A stretch of 64,000 nt of DNA, taken from the NCBI RefSeq assembly GCF_031769215.1, contig NW_026781915.1, positions 1,984,001-2,048,000 of the forward strand, written 5' to 3'. Shown here one piece after another: positions 51,961-58,769 of the stretch. The DNA comes from Ylistrum balloti (Eukaryota). The position numbers and the translations under genes are program-made. A model generated the notes under the pieces. It worked only from the letters and a program-made list of their open reading frames with translations, ran no database searches and was not told the origin of the DNA. The stretch's first letter is position 1; every line of letters begins with the position of its first letter.

Positions 51961-53460
51961 GTAAGTTAACAAGGTTTTATGATATTGTATTCTGAACAGC
52001 TTTCAAAACACAGGATTGCTCTGAGAAACAAACGACGTCTACAACCTTGACCTATGACCTGATTGGTTTTATTAGTACAAAGGAATTGCCACCTACACTA
52101 ATAACCCACTAAAGTGAAATTTCATCTTCAAAATGTTCCATGATAATCATATTGATTAAATGTTCTGACATATAATGGAAACTCTTCATACATAGAGTGC
52201 ATATTGCATGGGAAGACTGATCATAAAATAGATCCTCTGTGGATAATAGTGGGATGTTTCGCCACGTATCATCATCAACACCGACGCTTTGACCCGTCAG
52301 CTTGTGGGCTTTTTTTCTTTCTGATAATTCTTAAAACACCCAGCACACCAATCTCTTGATCATCAGTAAAGTCATATATTTCTAGCAGATTACTTGGTTA
52401 AATGTCTCTCCTGTAAACAACTTTGCAACCTGTACCTACACATCTACCTCTCTTTGTGAGAACGGTACTGTATTAGGTGTCTAAAGTCACCGCCAAGTAG
52501 AAAATGTAGATAGTAATGTAAAAACAAGAAACAAAGCAATTGATGACATAGGGATATATGGGGTTTATAACATATTGTTGGAAGATTTGTATAGTAGATA
52601 TCGGTCATATGATGTCTTCTCTCCACTTCGTGCCCGAAAAGAAAACTCAAACCCGCAAATACTCATTTGCCGTACTAGCCCGTCACGAATTAGTGCAGTA
52701 GGCGTTTAATAATACATGGTGTAGAAAATACATTGTACGTACGAATCTCACTCCGACAGACGTGACGCAAACGTCCCTAACGCACACACTCCTCACCCAC
52801 GAGAGCGTCCTAGACACTCCATACTCACCTCCCATCACAGAATGTATCGCGCGCCCAGGAAAAACCGGAGATAATCCCCGGAAACCTGTGTCCAACGGGG
52901 CTGGAATCGATTACCTCCAATTGCAATACGTTCTCCGGGCCGACACAAGGACCGGTGTCGAAGAAAAAAAAAAAAAAAAAACAATCGTTCTACCGGAGCG
53001 CCACTAACACAATATCAGCCAATCACACTCCCACTAAGCATACCCAGACTTCCAGATTTCCTCGCCAGGAATGCAAGCATAAAATAGCAAGACTAGAAAA
53101 CGGAGCAAACCAACTACATATAATAATACTGATAGGCACACTAACTAACTAAATTAACTGGACTGCACTGCTAGACGGAGAGCTAGAGAATGACTATTCA
53201 CCCGCGCACCCACCCTTACCTGGGCATACGCACGTGCTCTACGTGCCTGAGAAGACGAACTATTCCCGCTATACTACCGAAACGCGGGAATATTTAAGTC
53301 TTCTCTCCACTTCGTGCCCGAAAAGAAAACTCAAACCCGCAAATACTCATTTGCCGTACTAGCCCGTCACGAATTAGAGAATTAACAAAGAAAGGGCAAG
53401 GGGGTTGTGGTTGGGGAATACCTAACCGCCTTTGAATAATTGATCAAATAACCATATTAA

Positions 53461-54534
53461 TTACAAACCTAACTTCTGTGTTACCAGTAAACGAGACTCC
53501 AAAGAGTCAGCGACATAACCATCCTTGCTAGATTCGCCTTTCCAGCGGCCATGCCTCCTGAAACATCGATCGTTCACTCCGTTGTTGGCGGCCACTGTGG
53601 CGCCCCCTGCTCTGAGCGAGTGTAAACCAAAATTTGTATCATTGGAAACTAGTTTCAACCTTTTCATGACAGCTTGCCTAGCCCCTGTGTAACTAAGTGG
53701 CTTATTTTTGTTAATAAGCTTACAACCCTGACCGGAACGATAAACTTGCTTAAACAAAAAATGATCCGAACTTAAGTCAATTTTTGATAACTCAACATAC
53801 CTTGATAACATGGTGTACGGACAAGCTACAGTCGAACCTTTACTGATGACCACTTGACTACCAAAGCGATATTTGTCTGTTTTACTTTTCCTGATATTGA
53901 GCGTTAAATGCCCCTCGAAAAACTGAACATCAGAGCAACGCAAACTACTGAGCTCGTTAAAACGTAAAAAACCGGAAAACCCTAACAAAATCATGGCAAG
54001 ATCTCTCACTACCAACAAGTCATTCTCATTCAAAAACATTCCACACAAATTGATCAAAATGTCAGTCGTGACCGGTTCCTTTTTGCAAACAGGATTTTTA
54101 GCCTCTCGTTTGGAAAATTCAATTAAGTTCTGTACGAATGAGTTTGTTGTAGGGTCGATGTGTCCGTTAAGATTGTGCACCCATTTGATAGCATATACTG
54201 CAGACGACACCACTGCGTAAGTCCCTCCCTTTTCCAATAAAGAATTTAAATATAATGCCACGTGTATGGGATTTGCCGGGATAGACGAAAAACCATGTCC
54301 GGAAATGAAATGTTCCCATTTCGCGAAAGCTCCATAGTACTTGGTGCCTGTGTTGACACTCCTGCTTAGTAAAAGTCTGCCAGCCATACCCTCGGTCAGA
54401 GCGTGCAGATCGGAACCCTCCGTTACCCCAGAAGCTTTGACGGCATCGCTGATCGACTTCCTCAGTCCTATGCCTGTAACAATAAACACAGTAAAACAAT
54501 GCTCAGTATGGTATGAACATGTGTAAGTTTTCAA
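53461..54534 (-). CDS. Tyrosine recombinase of the element (no ATG until 54387; probably spliced onto Gag)
   Basis: Catalytic set: R (GFLRFNE), K (KSKTD), HxxR (HSLRAGG), HGRW, Y (DGYV). N-terminal core-binding region present. The ORF-track start is TTG overlapping the RT stop. Confidence 0.92.
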   Translation of the reverse strand: MKTYTCSYHTEHCFTVFIVTGIGLRKSISDAVKASGVTEGSDLHALTEGMAGRLLLSRSVNTGTKYYGAFAKWEHFISGHGFSSIPANPIHVALYLNSLLEKGGTYAVVSSAVYAIKWVHNLNGHIDPTTNSFVQNLIEFSKREAKNPVCKKEPVTTDILINLCGMFLNENDLLVVRDLAMILLGFSGFLRFNELSSLRCSDVQFFEGHLTLNIRKSKTDKYRFGSQVVISKGSTVACPYTMLSRYVELSKIDLSSDHFLFKQVYRSGQGCKLINKNKPLSYTGARQAVMKRLKLVSNDTNFGLHSLRAGGATVAANNGVNDRCFRRHGRWKGESSKDGYVADSLESRLLVTQKLGL

Positions 54535-57500
54535 TGTCTAAAGTCTAACCGGAGGGCCAACATGTCGAAACCCAAAACACTGGCTCCGAAACATCCATTG
54601 TTCCCCCTCCCCCTCAGTGTGACTTTTCTACTGGGCAGTATACGATAATCTACTATGAAAGAATCGAAAGCCCCATCCTTAGGACACAATAAGTGCCAGT
54701 ATGCCGCGCTCCTCCAATGGGGGACAATTATGGTCCCATAAGCTCCTTCGTCCCTCATTTTGCTAACCACACCGCAAACGAGTCTAGGGGGAGGTACTAA
54801 CCAGTTGTTGACTCCCTGCCATCTTACCGTGAAAGCATCGACTGCCTCTGTACCCGGGCACCACCACTTGGAATTAAAACGCACACATTTGCTGTTATAA
54901 TCTGTCGCGAACCGGTCGATTTGATGTGGACCCCATAATAACTGACACTCCTCAAAAACCCATGACTGCACCGACCAATCGTCACAGTCTTTACATCTAC
55001 TCAAGTAATCGGCGGTACTGTTACTAATCCTTGGTAGCCACTGTGTACTAACGCCCGTGTTATTATAATCCAACACCTCGTTAATCTCACGTGCGACCCT
55101 CTGTAGGTCTGGCTTCCTGCTACCAGTTTTCACTATGGAACAAACGTTTCTGTTATCTGTTAACAGTTTTACCTGCTTACCTTTGACCATATCGACCTTA
55201 GCCAACAACACCCTTTTGACTGCTTCTAACTCTCTCCAAGTTGAGCTATACCTTTTCTCCCGTTCATCCCATGTTCCCAACGCGACATGTTTATCCATGT
55301 GGTAAAGATCCCTTACTGTAGGAAGAGAGCGATCCAAAACGCTTACCTCGCTGCCCTGCAGACCAATCACGTCACTCACTGGGCCACCTACTAGTCCTCC
55401 CGTGGGACTAATACTGCTACCGTAGCAAAACCCGGGTCTCGGAGACCCCCTAACACCCTGGGTGCTGTTGCATTGACCAAGAAACTCGAACGTTTGACCC
55501 CATTTTGTTCCATCATGATCATGGCCTAAATATATCCGGGGTCGGACCTCACAAGCCCCCTGGGGGTGTTGAAAAACATCTGTACCATGTACCGTTACAA
55601 AGTCCCCCTGGGGGATTACACCTTGGTAACATTTGCTTGCACCTGTCTCGATACTGTTTGTATCGTGTATGTATGTGCACCCGTTGACACCTTGCGTCAC
55701 TCCAACATGCTCACACCTGCCTGATGTGTCCACATATTGAACATAACCCCCGTATCCCTCACCGGATGCATCAGTACGAAGTATGGCGTCACAGACTAGG
55801 TGTTGCTTTAACTGTGAACCCTTATCGTTCAGTGCCTTTACGTTAGACAACCAAAATTGGATCTCGTCTAGAGCTCCCGACGTGAGCAAAACACGCGCAT
55901 TCCAACTGGCTCTAGCCAATACACACCTGTACAACTCCCGTGTACGTAGTCTAGCCACGTGACCGACAACACCTTGCATTGATATGACCTGACCTACTAT
56001 GCCCGCTATGTACCTGGCCGAGAGCAAAGGCAGGTCTTTCTGTTTGACATGTGTCATCGTATTGGTCAGCCAATACAAAAGCCGCTCGACACGACCCGAC
56101 GTGACCCTGACCACGCCTTCTCCCATCGACCACGTGTAACCTAACCACGTGACATGCTGGGAAGCTACCCAATTGGACTTCTCCTCGGCTATGAGAAAAC
56201 CGTAATCGATCAATGCCTGTCTGACATACCTACTGGACTCGTTAGCCCCGCCCTCTGTCTCGTGACCTCCAATACCGTCGTCCAAATACATGACCAATTT
56301 GTGACCTAATAAACGGATAGATTTGACCACCTCCCTTAGAACCTTGGTAAACACGTAACCAGCAGTAGAGATACCAAACGGTAACACATTGAAAACAAAC
56401 TGGCGTGTTTTGCCTTCCACTTCAAACTCAAAACCGAGAAATTGCCTGTGCTCTTCAAAAATTTCGATATGGTGGTAAGCAGACTTCAAATCAAAAGTGA
56501 ACAAAAAATCTCCTGGCTGGAAAACATCCCGTGCTACCCTTGCATCGTCGTATTTAAACTTGAATTTATGCAAAAAAGGGTTTATGTGCCTGCAATCCAA
56601 AACTAGGCGGGGCTTACCTGATTGATTGAAAGCTACAGTGAGCGGATTTATGACCGCGGGCTCTGACGAAACTTCCGACACACAACCTAACCGTAAAAGC
56701 TTAGTTATCTCCCCCACGACAAAATCGGGGTTATCTTTTGCGGTTTTGTTATTTGACAAAGACACCCTTGGTGGAATTTCGTGAAAAGGAATTTTATAAC
56801 CTCTCTCGATGATAGATTGTACTACTTCAATGGTACCTTGGTCTGCCCAATACTGGCTCTTACCCTTCAAGCGCCCCACTGGCGAAGTATCACATGTGAC
56901 ACGTGGAGCGTCCTGTGTCGCCCCTACCTTACCTGCGTCCTGCTTCGCCGATACTTTTTCATGCATATCAAATAAAGAACCACTTATCTTATATCCGGAT
57001 ACAGCCGAGGCGACTCCTTTGATTTCCGGACACTCTTGTCGCCAATGTCCGGCCTTTCCACACCCAAAGCATGTACCGGGCTTGGTCCCGCCCCGTGGGA
57101 AAGGACCTGTTCTGTCGGTCGTAGTAGCGGCGTTTGTCTGGCTCCTGGACACAAAAGTCTCTCTTTGATAAGGGTTGAAACGCTGTCTTCCCCTGCTGGA
57201 CTTTAACTTTTCCGCCTTTGCCTTTTTAACTGCCTTGGAGCTGGCCCTGTCGATTTTCCTTTCATCGTCGGAGTCCGACGCTATAGGATTTGCTACATAC
57301 TCATCGACGGTTTTCCAGCCTGCTTCAGAACTGTCCGCCAACTTAATTAGCTTGTTGCGATAGTCTATAAGCGACATACCCTCCTGTATCTTAAGCCTGG
57401 CGGTGTCCATGTCCGTACTGACGGCCTGCGCGTCGTCCAATAATTTCCCGCGCACTTTGGTATTGAACTTGTACTGTTCCTCGCAACTTCTCTTTTTGAA

Positions 57501-57695
57501 TTTGTAGGTATCCGTACACTGAATTGTTTCTTGTATCTTGTTTAAAGATGCCTCAGAATTTTCACACATTTTTCTCTCAAACGAGCTCAACTTTTGTGAA
57601 ATTAATGTATCCAAATGCCCGAGTATTTCGTTTTGTGACTTTCCAACCGCAGCCTGTATCTGGTCCGACAGTGTGCATAATGAATCGTTCTGCAT
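54531..57695 (-). CDS. Gag(CCHC)-RT-RNaseH-methyltransferase-like polyprotein of the element (1054 aa)
   Basis: Zinc knuckle CFGCGKAGHWRQEC. RT motifs DLKSAYHHI, FNVLPFG, YLDDG. RNaseH motifs TDAS, RELEAV, TDN, ADYLSR. C-terminal IDRFA...NWLVPPP...VPHW, typical of the DIRS MT-like domain. Confidence 0.93.
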   Translation of the reverse strand: MQNDSLCTLSDQIQAAVGKSQNEILGHLDTLISQKLSSFERKMCENSEASLNKIQETIQCTDTYKFKKRSCEEQYKFNTKVRGKLLDDAQAVSTDMDTARLKIQEGMSLIDYRNKLIKLADSSEAGWKTVDEYVANPIASDSDDERKIDRASSKAVKKAKAEKLKSSRGRQRFNPYQRETFVSRSQTNAATTTDRTGPFPRGGTKPGTCFGCGKAGHWRQECPEIKGVASAVSGYKISGSLFDMHEKVSAKQDAGKVGATQDAPRVTCDTSPVGRLKGKSQYWADQGTIEVVQSIIERGYKIPFHEIPPRVSLSNNKTAKDNPDFVVGEITKLLRLGCVSEVSSEPAVINPLTVAFNQSGKPRLVLDCRHINPFLHKFKFKYDDARVARDVFQPGDFLFTFDLKSAYHHIEIFEEHRQFLGFEFEVEGKTRQFVFNVLPFGISTAGYVFTKVLREVVKSIRLLGHKLVMYLDDGIGGHETEGGANESSRYVRQALIDYGFLIAEEKSNWVASQHVTWLGYTWSMGEGVVRVTSGRVERLLYWLTNTMTHVKQKDLPLLSARYIAGIVGQVISMQGVVGHVARLRTRELYRCVLARASWNARVLLTSGALDEIQFWLSNVKALNDKGSQLKQHLVCDAILRTDASGEGYGGYVQYVDTSGRCEHVGVTQGVNGCTYIHDTNSIETGASKCYQGVIPQGDFVTVHGTDVFQHPQGACEVRPRIYLGHDHDGTKWGQTFEFLGQCNSTQGVRGSPRPGFCYGSSISPTGGLVGGPVSDVIGLQGSEVSVLDRSLPTVRDLYHMDKHVALGTWDEREKRYSSTWRELEAVKRVLLAKVDMVKGKQVKLLTDNRNVCSIVKTGSRKPDLQRVAREINEVLDYNNTGVSTQWLPRISNSTADYLSRCKDCDDWSVQSWVFEECQLLWGPHQIDRFATDYNSKCVRFNSKWWCPGTEAVDAFTVRWQGVNNWLVPPPRLVCGVVSKMRDEGAYGTIIVPHWRSAAYWHLLCPKDGAFDSFIVDYRILPSRKVTLRGRGNNGCFGASVLGFDMLALRLDFRH

Positions 57696-58769
57696 GGTAG
57701 AAACTATGATACTATATATATGATAGAGACATTAACTGGACTGCACTGCTAGACGGAGAGCTAGAGAATGACTATTCACCCGCGCACCCACCCTTACCTG
57801 GGCATACGCACGTGCTCTACGTGCCTGAGAAGACGAACTATTCCCGCTATACTACCGAAACGCGGGAATATTTAAATATTGTTTTAAGTCCTAACTATAA
57901 TTCATTGAAGGACATGTCGGCATTAATTGTATGCGTGCTCGGGGTTGCTATATATTAGGAAAGGCATATGTGTGCATGTTGGTTTGGAGTGTAACAGGAT
58001 GGTCTCCTATGTCCACCAGCTGTATCCATAAAGCCAAAATTCAACACTTTGCACAGATAGTAAAGAAGTGATATCGGAATACTTACTGTATTAGAATTTT
58101 GGCATTTAGGTTATGGTTTGAACATTCGTATTTCGTTAAAATAATTATATTTCTTTATCTGTTTTGTGACAATAGATTTTCGTTAAAATATGTTATATGT
58201 TTGATATTTCTCTTCTTTCCTCTTTTTTGCTTATAAGTATTTGAAACTGAATACGTCTCAAGGAATAATCGTAATGATCTTTATCTATCAAATCAACGAG
58301 GTCTGTTTTCAGTAATTTTGTTTGTACCTTTCAGGAAATAGCGATAACAAACTTCTAAATCCAAGTTTTTGTCTCTCTATTATTTTGTTTCTATGATCAG
58401 TAAGAGCACAACTAGAGACCAAGAAGTACCTATTTATATACTGCGATAGCAAACTTTTATACTCAAAATCTAAGATGGCCGCCAGTGAACCATTTTATTT
58501 TTATGATCGTTATTACGCGTCACTGGGACAAAACATAATGCTGCGGACAGTATTCATTATCATTATCTAAGCAACATATCTTATTTGTGAATATTCAAAT
58601 TTGTGTCATTTTTTTTTACAAATATATCTTACAATAAATTTTCGATAAGATTTAGTACACTTCTTTCCTCAGAAATAACGAGGTCTTCTTCTATTGTACT
58701 CGTATTGATCCAATACATTCTACAGTAAAGTATTAGAAGTTCTCTCCCTTCAAATAGCTGAAAAATTGT

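What the first reader, a model, noticed from the sequence alone, without database searches (positions are those of the whole stretch)
54474..56932. Predicted alternative splicing switches a retrotransposon between Gag-RT and Gag-recombinase
Seen: (1) Gag and RT are one ORF with no protease evident. (2) The YR frame has no ATG for its first 49 codons. (3) A consensus donor CAG|GTAAGG lies about 35 codons after the zinc knuckle, at the Gag/RT boundary (exon ends 56933, first base of codon 255, phase 1). (4) A strong acceptor cattgttttactgtgtttattgttacag|GC, with a 28-nt AG-free pyrimidine-rich tract, sits at 54474-54476, and 54473 is the second base of YR codon 21 (phase 1). Splicing the 2459-nt intron gives ...KQDA-G-IGLRKS..., an in-frame Gag(254 aa)-YR(337 aa) protein of 591 aa, and removes all of RT, RNaseH and MT. 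Inference: unspliced RNA serves as template and makes Gag-RT, while spliced RNA makes Gag-YR. The shared Gag would co-assemble polymerase and integrase into one particle, and the splice ratio would set their stoichiometry, giving the host a control point. I do not know of this being described for DIRS-order elements, but I could not check the literature.
Basis: partly seen in the sequence, partly recalled or inferred. Interest (0 to 1): 0.85.

Follow-up and report, generated by a model that had tools for sequence, protein, structure and literature searches.

The report
Spliced recombinase message in scallop-type retrotransposon

Summary
Only part of the interpretation survives.

- **Acceptor.** The acceptor (…tattgttacag|GC, exon 2 starts at 54473, phase 1) is real. 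The same Y-tract, AG and phase sit at the homologous spot in 14 diverged bivalve families and in a sea-urchin element. Protein conservation starts exactly there. Four intact families have no in-frame Met for 100-160 codons.
- **RNA evidence.** In probable RNA-seq contigs of a 92-93% relative, contigs break at this AG, and two contigs join upstream sequence to it.
The donor at 56933 is private to this family.
- **Conserved donor.** The conserved phase-1 donor is CAG|GTAAGC at the Gly codon of RT motif 1 (exon end 56618). NCBI gene models in Mizuhopecten and Mytilus use it. It gives a 696-aa Gag, RT N-terminus and YR protein.
A 5'-splice-site-like motif, MAG|WTRAGT, lies 7-15 codons after the zinc knuckle in all 10 families, in phase 0. 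A stop codon follows the acceptor in frame 0 in 13 of 15 families. One RNA joint lands exactly on this motif, which points to a Gag-only message.

This scan reached a similar verdict on another copy (s1-234351). I found no paper describing this.

The parts
57731..57880 (-). Repeat A1, the 5' terminal half of the split direct repeats. It contains a CAG|GTAAGG (exon end 57798) that other families do not share.
   Evidence: the repeat finder (150 nt, 99% to A2); donor scan.
54531..57695 (-). ORF1: Gag(CCHC)-RT-RNaseH-Dam-like MT, 1054 aa, with no protease.
57024..57077 (-). CCHC zinc knuckle of Gag (residues 207-224).
   Evidence: Pfam zf-CCHC
56982..56990 (-). 5'-splice-site-like motif AAG|ATAAGT, encoding K236-I-S. 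It is in phase 0 and has A, not G, at intron position +1.
   Evidence: The same nucleotide motif, MAG|WTRAGT, occurs once per element at the homologous spot in 10 of 10 families, including a sea urchin. For the nine families, the joint probability given amino acids and codon usage is 6e-13. The X8 contig joint 54473<->56988 and a contig break at 56988 fall on it.
56927..56935 (-). A weaker tandem donor lies 5 nt on (AAG|GTAGGG, exon end 56928, phase 0).
   Evidence: No counterpart in other families.
56612..56620 (-). Conserved phase-1 donor CAG|GTAAGC. The exon ends at 56618, the first base of codon 360, which is the Gly of RT motif 1 (S-G-KPRLVLD).
   Evidence: The same donor is in L063, L065, L070 and L074. 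The junctions of NCBI models P0290 and P0278 map here.
55175..55183 (-). Third phase-1 consensus donor AAG|GTAAGC (exon end 55181, codon 839, in RNase H). L068 has a homologous donor.
54474..54501 (-). 3' splice site: a 26-nt AG-free pyrimidine-rich tract followed by the AG at 54475-54474.
   Evidence: Contig breaks at 54474/54475 and two joints.
54468..54470 (-). TAG stop in frame 0 of exon 2 (GCA TAG). It ends translation for any phase-0 donor.
   Evidence: A stop sits at the second codon in 13 of 15 families and at the fourth in the other two. About 5.2 of the 14 bivalve families would be expected from codon usage.
53461..54473 (-). YR exon: 336 codons plus stop. The first in-frame ATG is at 54387.
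   Evidence: Pfam Phage_integrase.
53298..53384 (-). Repeat B1.
53153..53302 (-). Repeat A2.
52614..52700 (-). Repeat B2, the 3' end of the element.

Best explanation
This is an intact, very young Pat1-like (PAT group, DIRS order) retrotransposon with about 14 identical copies in the genome. The full-length RNA encodes Gag-RT-RNaseH-MT and serves as the replication template. The recombinase has no usable start of its own. The sequence in front of it is a true 3' splice site in phase 1. A phase-1 donor inside ORF1 is joined to it, so the recombinase is translated from the Gag AUG as a fusion protein.

The evolutionarily conserved donor is CAG|GTAAGC at the Gly codon of RT motif 1 (56618|56617). 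It gives a 696-aa product: Gag, then the first ~105 residues after Gag, then YR.

The same acceptor probably has a second output. Phase-0 donors, above all the conserved MAG|WTRAGT motif just after the zinc knuckle, run into a conserved stop two codons after the junction. That would give a Gag-only message (237 aa here).

Shown: the sequence features, their conservation, and use of the acceptor in RNA-like contigs of a close relative. Inferred: which donor is used in this element, the proteins made, and any role in stoichiometry.
For: **Acceptor**
- The Y-tract, AG and phase 1 lie at the homologous position in 14 bivalve families with 50-67% YR identity and in Diadema.
- Amino acids upstream of it are unconserved, and the frame closes 4-44 codons upstream.
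- Conservation starts at G-[ILV]-x-L, directly after the AG.
- The first in-frame Met is at residue 102-161 in the intact families L063, L068, L070 and L074.
- In L063 the YR frame opens only after the ORF1 stop, so frameshifting cannot reach it.

**RNA-like evidence**
- In X1 and X8 contigs break at 54474/54475.
- In X8 the depth of the YR exon is 22. The three contigs entering it have depths 12.4, 6.3 and 4.
- Two joint contigs end at 54473/54472.
- All 15 DNA matches in the genome run through the acceptor uninterrupted, so the break is not a DNA variant here.

**Motif-1 donor**
- It is a consensus donor in phase 1 in the window, L063, L065, L070 and L074.
- GGT AAG is kept in 5 of 6 families that have G-K at this site, against about 0.2 expected per family.
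- It is the only strong donor in L063.
- NCBI models P0290 (Mizuhopecten, on an intact 1044-aa ORF1) and P0278, P0042, P0279 and P0281 (Mytilus trossulus, at least 4 loci) join this region to the same acceptor with GT-AG.
- Codon shuffles give this many phase-1 donors of score 6.5 or more with P = 0.011 (window), 0.039 (L063) and 0.02 (L068).

**Gag-only branch**
- The conserved motif, the conserved frame-0 stop, and the X8 joint and contig break at 56988.
Against: - No RNA run of this element itself could be found.
- The runs laid are only guessed to be RNA, and they hold a 92-93% relative.
- No joint from 56618 or 56933 was seen in them. In X1 one contig runs unbroken from 57670 to 54801.
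- The joint at 56988 implies a non-G first intron base in the abundant unspliced form, which is non-canonical (AT-AG) unless a subset of copies carries G there.
- The joint at about 54951 lies at an unconserved site.
- The motif-1 donor is missing in L068, L071, L073 and Diadema. Diadema and L071 have no donor of score 5 or more at all.
- I could not check the RNA support for the NCBI models. Other models pick other donors.
- No contiguous fused ORF from a transcript-like Logan contig turned up in three protein searches.
- The donor weights I used are approximate and come from memory.
Confidence: 0.6

Rival explanations
1. One reading: the only relevant splice is 56933 to 54473. It gives a clean Gag(254)-YR(337) protein and removes all of RT, RNase H and MT.
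For: Both sites are consensus and in phase, and the product is in frame at 591 aa. It cuts at the Gag/RT linker, which is tidier for protein domains. The donor scores slightly above the motif-1 donor (7.4 against 7.2).
Against: The donor is absent at the homologous place in L063, L065, L068, L070, L071, L073, L074, L075 and L076. It lies in a hypervariable linker that carries many indels even in the 92-93% relative (table 4). No joint from 56933 was seen. The NCBI models with this acceptor use other donors.
Confidence: 0.2
2. Splicing to this acceptor mainly makes a Gag-only message, from the phase-0 motif after the zinc knuckle to the acceptor and then an immediate stop. This resembles the copia/BARE strategy for making excess Gag. 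YR would be made some other way, for example by re-initiation at the downstream Met or by rarer phase-1 splices.
For: These are the three most widely conserved features: the MAG|WTRAGT motif in 10 of 10 families, the acceptor in 15 of 15, and the frame-0 stop in 13 of 15 at codon 2. They are present even in Diadema and L071, which lack any strong GT donor. The one well-placed RNA joint (56988 to 54473) is of this kind. Gag and RT share one ORF with no frameshift, so some device for excess Gag is expected. Splicing does this in Ty1/copia (PMC5580714) and BARE (PMC3735527).
Against: Intron position +1 is A or T in every family. From general knowledge, that allows 5' cleavage but blocks exon ligation. 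It does not explain why the Met-less YR N-terminus is conserved as protein in phase 1. The joint was seen in only one run.
Confidence: 0.3
3. There is no splicing. YR is translated from its own ATG (54387), or from a non-AUG codon, on unspliced RNA or on an RNA that starts at an internal promoter near 54474. The joints are template-switch artefacts made at the 5' end of that RNA.
For: NCBI also annotates 308-aa YR proteins that start at this Met. The two joints have 2-3 nt of microhomology and non-canonical 5' ends on the window sequence. No fused ORF was found in Logan contigs.
Against: The Met is absent in L045, L063, L065, L068, L070 and L074. The 28 residues before it are conserved as protein. 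A Y-tract plus AG in a fixed phase is conserved from sea urchin to bivalves. One joint lands on a motif conserved in 10 of 10 families.
Confidence: 0.08
4. A retrovirus-like leader splice: the CAG|GTAAGG in repeat A (exon end 57798) is joined to the acceptor and gives a subgenomic YR mRNA.
For: A consensus donor (score 7.4) lies 102 nt upstream of the Gag ATG.
Against: The nearest upstream ATG (gcgtATGcccag) lies directly at the donor and puts the junction in phase 2, which is not the YR frame (read; ORF). No leader donor of score 5 or more is present in L071, L074, L075 or L076. No such joint appears.
Confidence: 0.05

Closest known systems
Pat1-like elements, echinoderm form (PAT group of the DIRS order; SpPat1, mollusc and cnidarian PAT elements; PMC4157794)
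   Same: Gag with a zinc knuckle; RT-RNaseH-MT followed by YR; split direct repeats A1...B1A2...B2 with the internal repeats downstream of YR.
   Different: Gag and RT are fused in one ORF here. No paper I could search describes splice sites or spliced messages for these elements.
Ty1/copia and BARE spliced subgenomic GAG RNA (PMC5580714, PMC3735527)
   Same: A single gag-pol ORF. Splicing removes pol sequence and yields a Gag-only message, which sets the Gag:Pol ratio. The unspliced RNA is the template.
   Different: Those elements carry a DDE integrase inside pol. Here the same acceptor would also, through phase-1 donors, deliver the recombinase as a Gag fusion. The conserved Gag-side site lacks G at position +1.
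Retroviral spliced mRNAs: env, and foamy-virus Pol from its own spliced message (my own knowledge, not checked here)
   Same: A downstream enzyme or envelope gene is reached by splicing from an upstream donor to an acceptor just before the gene.
   Different: Retroviral donors lie in the leader, and the downstream ORF uses its own AUG. Here the donor is inside the coding region, and the reading frame is carried over from Gag.
DIRS-1 of Dictyostelium (PMC7192593)
   Same: A tyrosine-recombinase retrotransposon of the same order. An engineered reporter intron in its RNA is spliced and the spliced copy is reverse-transcribed.
   Different: It has inverted terminal repeats and three overlapping ORFs. 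That paper reports no native splicing.

Membership tests
DIRS order, PAT group (Pat1-like, echinoderm form) | Reverse transcriptase plus RNase H | tested here: met
   RVT_1 E=6.8e-16; RT_RNaseH E=9.2e-6
DIRS order, PAT group (Pat1-like, echinoderm form) | Tyrosine recombinase instead of a DDE integrase | tested here: met
   Phage_integrase E=1.5e-9 on the 357-aa frame. No integrase or protease family was hit in ORF1.
DIRS order, PAT group (Pat1-like, echinoderm form) | Dam-like methyltransferase domain between RNase H and YR | tested here: inconclusive
   PF05869 E=0.008, 16 bits, below the 28.1-bit cutoff. Related ORF1 proteins carry PF05869 in precomputed hits.
DIRS order, PAT group (Pat1-like, echinoderm form) | Split direct repeats A1-...-B1A2-...-B2, with the internal pair after YR | tested here: met
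   A: 57731-57880 and 53153-53302 (99%). B: 53298-53384 and 52614-52700 (97%).
DIRS order, PAT group (Pat1-like, echinoderm form) | Gag with a CCHC zinc finger | tested here: met
   zf-CCHC at residues 207-224, below Pfam's curated cutoffs (17.0 and 19.9 bits against 20.8 and 27); the C-x2-C-x4-H-x4-C spacing was also found by pattern.
Retroelements that use a spliced subgenomic mRNA | Conserved 3' splice site directly upstream of the downstream gene | tested here: met
   15 of 15 families, same phase
Retroelements that use a spliced subgenomic mRNA | Conserved 5' splice site whose phase fits the acceptor | tested here: inconclusive
The motif-1 phase-1 donor is present in 5 families at the same codon and 4 codons away in L075. 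It is absent in 4 families.
Retroelements that use a spliced subgenomic mRNA | Junction reads in RNA | tested here: inconclusive
   Two joints to 54473/54472 in one probable RNA run of a 92-93% relative, and contig breaks at the AG in two runs. No RNA run of this element was listed.
Retroelements that use a spliced subgenomic mRNA | The spliced product is an open reading frame | tested here: met
   591 aa (56933), 696 aa (56618), 614 aa (56864), 237 aa ending at the conserved stop (56988)

The most novel reading that the evidence does not exclude
One conserved acceptor serves as a reading-phase switch in Pat1-like retrotransposons from echinoderms to molluscs. Phase-0 splicing from a conserved U1-like site that lacks the canonical G at +1 (MAG|WTRAGT, just after the zinc knuckle) hits a conserved stop and gives a Gag-only message. 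Phase-1 splicing from Gly-codon donors (G|GT) gives Gag-YR fusion proteins. The element would thus make Gag, Gag-RT and Gag-YR from one transcript without protease, frameshift or internal promoter. The crippled +1 base would keep most RNA unspliced as the template.
Probability: 0.3. Interest if true: 0.85.

Novelty: new variant of a known kind. Interest (0 to 1): 0.72.

Why it matters
How DIRS-order elements express their recombinase, and how they balance Gag against enzymes, is essentially unknown. They have no protease, and in this lineage Gag and RT share one frame. A conserved splice acceptor, with phase-dependent outcomes, would give a concrete and testable expression strategy for a whole order of retrotransposons. 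It would explain why YR ORFs in many families lack a start codon, and why genome annotators produce odd 'xerD homolog' gene models with CCHC domains. It also flags a conserved near-consensus 5' splice site with A or T at +1. That site is interesting for splicing biology whether it is spliced or only binds U1.

Tried and rejected
**RNA evidence for this element.** The look-up of sequencing runs listed only runs holding 7-8% of the words, and none when the search was restricted to 'RNA-Seq'. The single read-laying run therefore tested a 92-93% relative, not this family.

**More copies of diverged families from this genome.** Donor conservation could therefore only be tested on public contigs L062-L076, not on the own-genome families L045-L056. 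Those loci reach only 1.5 kb upstream of YR.

**Contiguous fused ORFs in transcript-like contigs.** None turned up in three word-index searches and one exhaustive profile search. Every fusion found is a gene model. The look-up of encoding contigs had no record for P0042 or P0171.

**Frameshift or termination-reinitiation between ORF1 and YR.** Rejected. In the window the overlap is two codons with no slippery site. In L063 the frames do not overlap at all.

**Leader donor in repeat A.** Rejected as a general mechanism, because it is not conserved and is in the wrong phase.

**Conservation at the second RNA joint (about 54951).** There is none.

**Phase bias of strong donors on its own.** This is weak evidence, because GTAAG or GTGAG cannot occur in phase 2 of an open frame, where it would read TAA or TGA.

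**The 81% relative on C156.** It has an 8-nt deletion that removes the acceptor, but it is a decayed copy with many stops, so it is uninformative.
Full report
**What is there**

The finding lies on the minus strand, inside a complete retrotransposon.
- ORF1 (57695..54531, 1054 aa) carries a CCHC knuckle, RVT_1, RNase H and a weak Dam-like match. It has no protease.
- The next frame (54534..53461) is a tyrosine recombinase (Phage_integrase).
- Split direct repeats frame the element: A1 57731-57880, B1 53298-53384, A2 53153-53302, B2 52614-52700.
- This is the echinoderm-form Pat1-like layout of the PAT group in the DIRS order, as described in PMC4157794.
- The genome holds about 14 essentially identical copies, plus many diverged families.

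**The observation**

- The donor GCAG|GTAAGG has its exon end at 56933, in phase 1.
- The acceptor ...tattgttacag|GC has exon 2 starting at 54473, in phase 1.
- The YR frame has no ATG before codon 50.
- The predicted join is an open 591-aa frame.
- The AG-free tract is 26 nt, not 28.

**The acceptor is real**

I compared the region in front of YR in 14 bivalve families with 50-67% YR identity.
- Six are from this genome (L045-L056).
- Six are public Logan or ENA contigs (L063-L073).
- Two are genomic loci, from Mizuhopecten (L074) and Mytilus trossulus (L075).
- I then added a sea-urchin element (Diadema, L076).

In every one, a pyrimidine-rich tract and an AG sit two bases before the codon for the conserved [ILV] of G-[ILV]-x-L. 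That is the same position and the same phase.

Upstream of the AG the frame is unconserved, and it closes after 4-44 codons. Protein conservation begins directly after the AG.

In four intact families (L063, L068, L070, L074) the first in-frame Met is at residue 102-161 of the 337-residue frame. Starting there would delete the N-terminal domain. In L063 the YR frame opens only after the ORF1 stop, which excludes frameshifting. Splicing is the one mechanism that fits all families.

**RNA-like evidence**

No RNA run holding this family was listed.

Four Logan-contig runs of 'organism A' hold a 92-93% relative. Their size and contig profile look like transcriptomes, but the tool marks RNA as a guess.
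- X4 has one contig across the whole unspliced element.
- In X1 and X8 the contigs break at 54474/54475, with the k-1 overlap expected at a graph branch.
- In X8 the YR-exon contig has depth 22. The three contigs entering it have depths 12.4 (intron side), 6.3 and 4.
- The last two are joints, 54473<->56988 and 54472<->54950. With 2-3 shared letters, both fit the AG|G acceptor.
- X8 contigs also break at 56988 and 54950.

In this genome all 15 DNA matches run straight through the acceptor. DNA copies that lack the intron are therefore not the explanation here.

**The donor**

It sits in a linker that is full of indels even in the 92-93% relative (table 4).

A second consensus donor in the window is CAG|GTAAGC, with its exon end at 56618. 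That base is the first of codon 360, the Gly of RT motif 1 (S-G-KPRLVLD), so it is also phase 1.
- The same donor at the same codon is present in L063 (where it is the only strong donor in the ORF), L065, L070 and L074. L075 has one four codons upstream.
- GGT AAG is kept in 5 of 6 families that have G-K there, against roughly 0.2 expected per family from their codon usage.
- Neighbouring synonymous sites vary freely.

NCBI gene models join this region to the acceptor with GT-AG.
- P0290 in Mizuhopecten (...YNRK-G-LGLEAT...) lies on an element with an intact 1044-aa ORF1.
- P0278, P0042, P0279 and P0281 lie at four Mytilus trossulus loci (...NPLTVA-G-IGLRDK...).
- Other models use other Gly-codon donors with the same acceptor: P0171, P0147, P0202, P0122, P0094, P0289 and P0291.
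- I could not see what RNA support any of these models has.

In the window the motif-1 join gives a 696-aa protein...AFNQS-G-IGLRKS.... It keeps about 105 residues between Gag and RT motif 1.

Codon-shuffle controls give modest support for an excess of strong phase-1 donors: window P=0.011, L063 P=0.039, L068 P=0.02, others not significant. The donor is not universal. L068 has lost it but has two other phase-1 donors. L071, L073 and Diadema lack it.

**A second conserved pair of features**

First, a post-knuckle motif. Seven to fifteen codons after the zinc knuckle, all ten families with that region encode K/Q-[ILM]-S using the same nucleotides: MAG|WTRAGT.
- In the window it is AAG|ATAAGT at 56990-56982. 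Diadema has CAG|ATAAGT.
- It occurs once per element on the sense strand, and it is absent from the antisense strand of all but one locus (one match in L076, whose locus includes flanks).
- For the nine families, the joint probability given the amino acids and each family's codon usage is 6e-13, ignoring shared ancestry.
- It matches the metazoan 5' splice-site consensus at every position except +1, which is A or T, never G. It is always in phase 0.

Second, a frame-0 stop. Reading exon 2 in frame 0 gives a stop at the second codon in 13 of 15 families (GCA TAG, GTG TGA, GCC TAG, GCT TAA, GGC TAG, GAA TAG, GTC TAG) and at the fourth codon in the other two. Codon usage predicts about 5.2 of the 14 bivalve families.

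The X8 joint at 56988 falls exactly on the motif. In the window it would give Gag of 236 residues plus Ala and a stop. This looks like the copia/BARE way of making excess Gag from a single gag-pol frame (PMC5580714, PMC3735527).

The difficulty is the non-G first intron base. The k-mer overlap in X8 shows that the abundant unspliced form does not have G there. Either exon ligation occurs on an AT-AG intron, or a minority of copies carry G and are spliced almost completely. The motif may also act only as a U1-binding site. I cannot decide between these.

**Rivals**

- The leader donor in repeat A is not conserved, and it would be out of frame.
- Translation from the Met at 54387 cannot be general.
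- Template switching at the 5' end of an internally initiated RNA would explain a fixed 3' end with microhomology. It would not explain the conserved Y-tract, AG and phase, nor a joint that lands on a motif conserved in ten families.
- The joint at about 54951 is at an unconserved site and may be noise.

**Literature and earlier notes**

Full-text searches found no description of native splicing in DIRS, PAT or Ngaro elements.

This scan's notes hold a follow-up on another copy of the same family (s1-234351). It also concluded that the recombinase comes from a spliced message, and that relatives point to a different, conserved donor. My tests agree with that.

**Verdict**

- The acceptor is almost certainly functional (about 0.85).
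- A Gag-led fusion as the source of YR is likely (about 0.65).
- The conserved near-consensus site plus the frame-0 stop suggest a further Gag-only output, which deserves direct RNA evidence.

Noticed in passing
window 57831-57875 (inside repeat A1; the same letters are in A2): In all four runs laid, this 45-nt piece has word depth of about 170-520, against 10-50 for the rest of the element. The deep contigs diverge from the window at 57831 into other sequence. The piece is shared with something far more abundant, either other families or a small RNA.
   Followed up: no
proteins P0044, P0112, P0353, P0365, P0367: YR and RT proteins 38-62% identical in their best local alignments to those of bivalve Pat1-like families (YR compared with this window, RT with Mytilus and Mizuhopecten models) are deposited as 'MAG... 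[Candidatus Thiodiazotropha]'. These are probably host (clam) retrotransposon contigs mis-binned into symbiont genomes.
   Followed up: no
G000:C156:113908-117215 (L015, L030, L031): An older relative (72-85% identity over matched stretches) has many stops and an 8-nt deletion that removes the acceptor AG (…tttatcat--------taggactg).
   Followed up: partly
G000 copies C452, C750, C162: Not all copies of the young family are intact. The C452 YR is split into two frames (98% and 93% pieces). ORF1 is open for only 729 aa on C750 and 1052 aa on C162, against 1066 elsewhere.
   Followed up: no
window 55451-55575: The 92-93% relative cannot be aligned here. There is a coverage gap in X8 and X16 and a 102-nt skip with 9 shared letters in X4. 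This is a hypervariable stretch between RT and RNase H.
   Followed up: no
window 54167-54499 (minus strand): A 110-aa ORF overlaps the start of YR in the frame that a phase-2 join would read, including a join from the repeat-A donor. That frame closes quickly in other families, so it is probably meaningless.
   Followed up: partly
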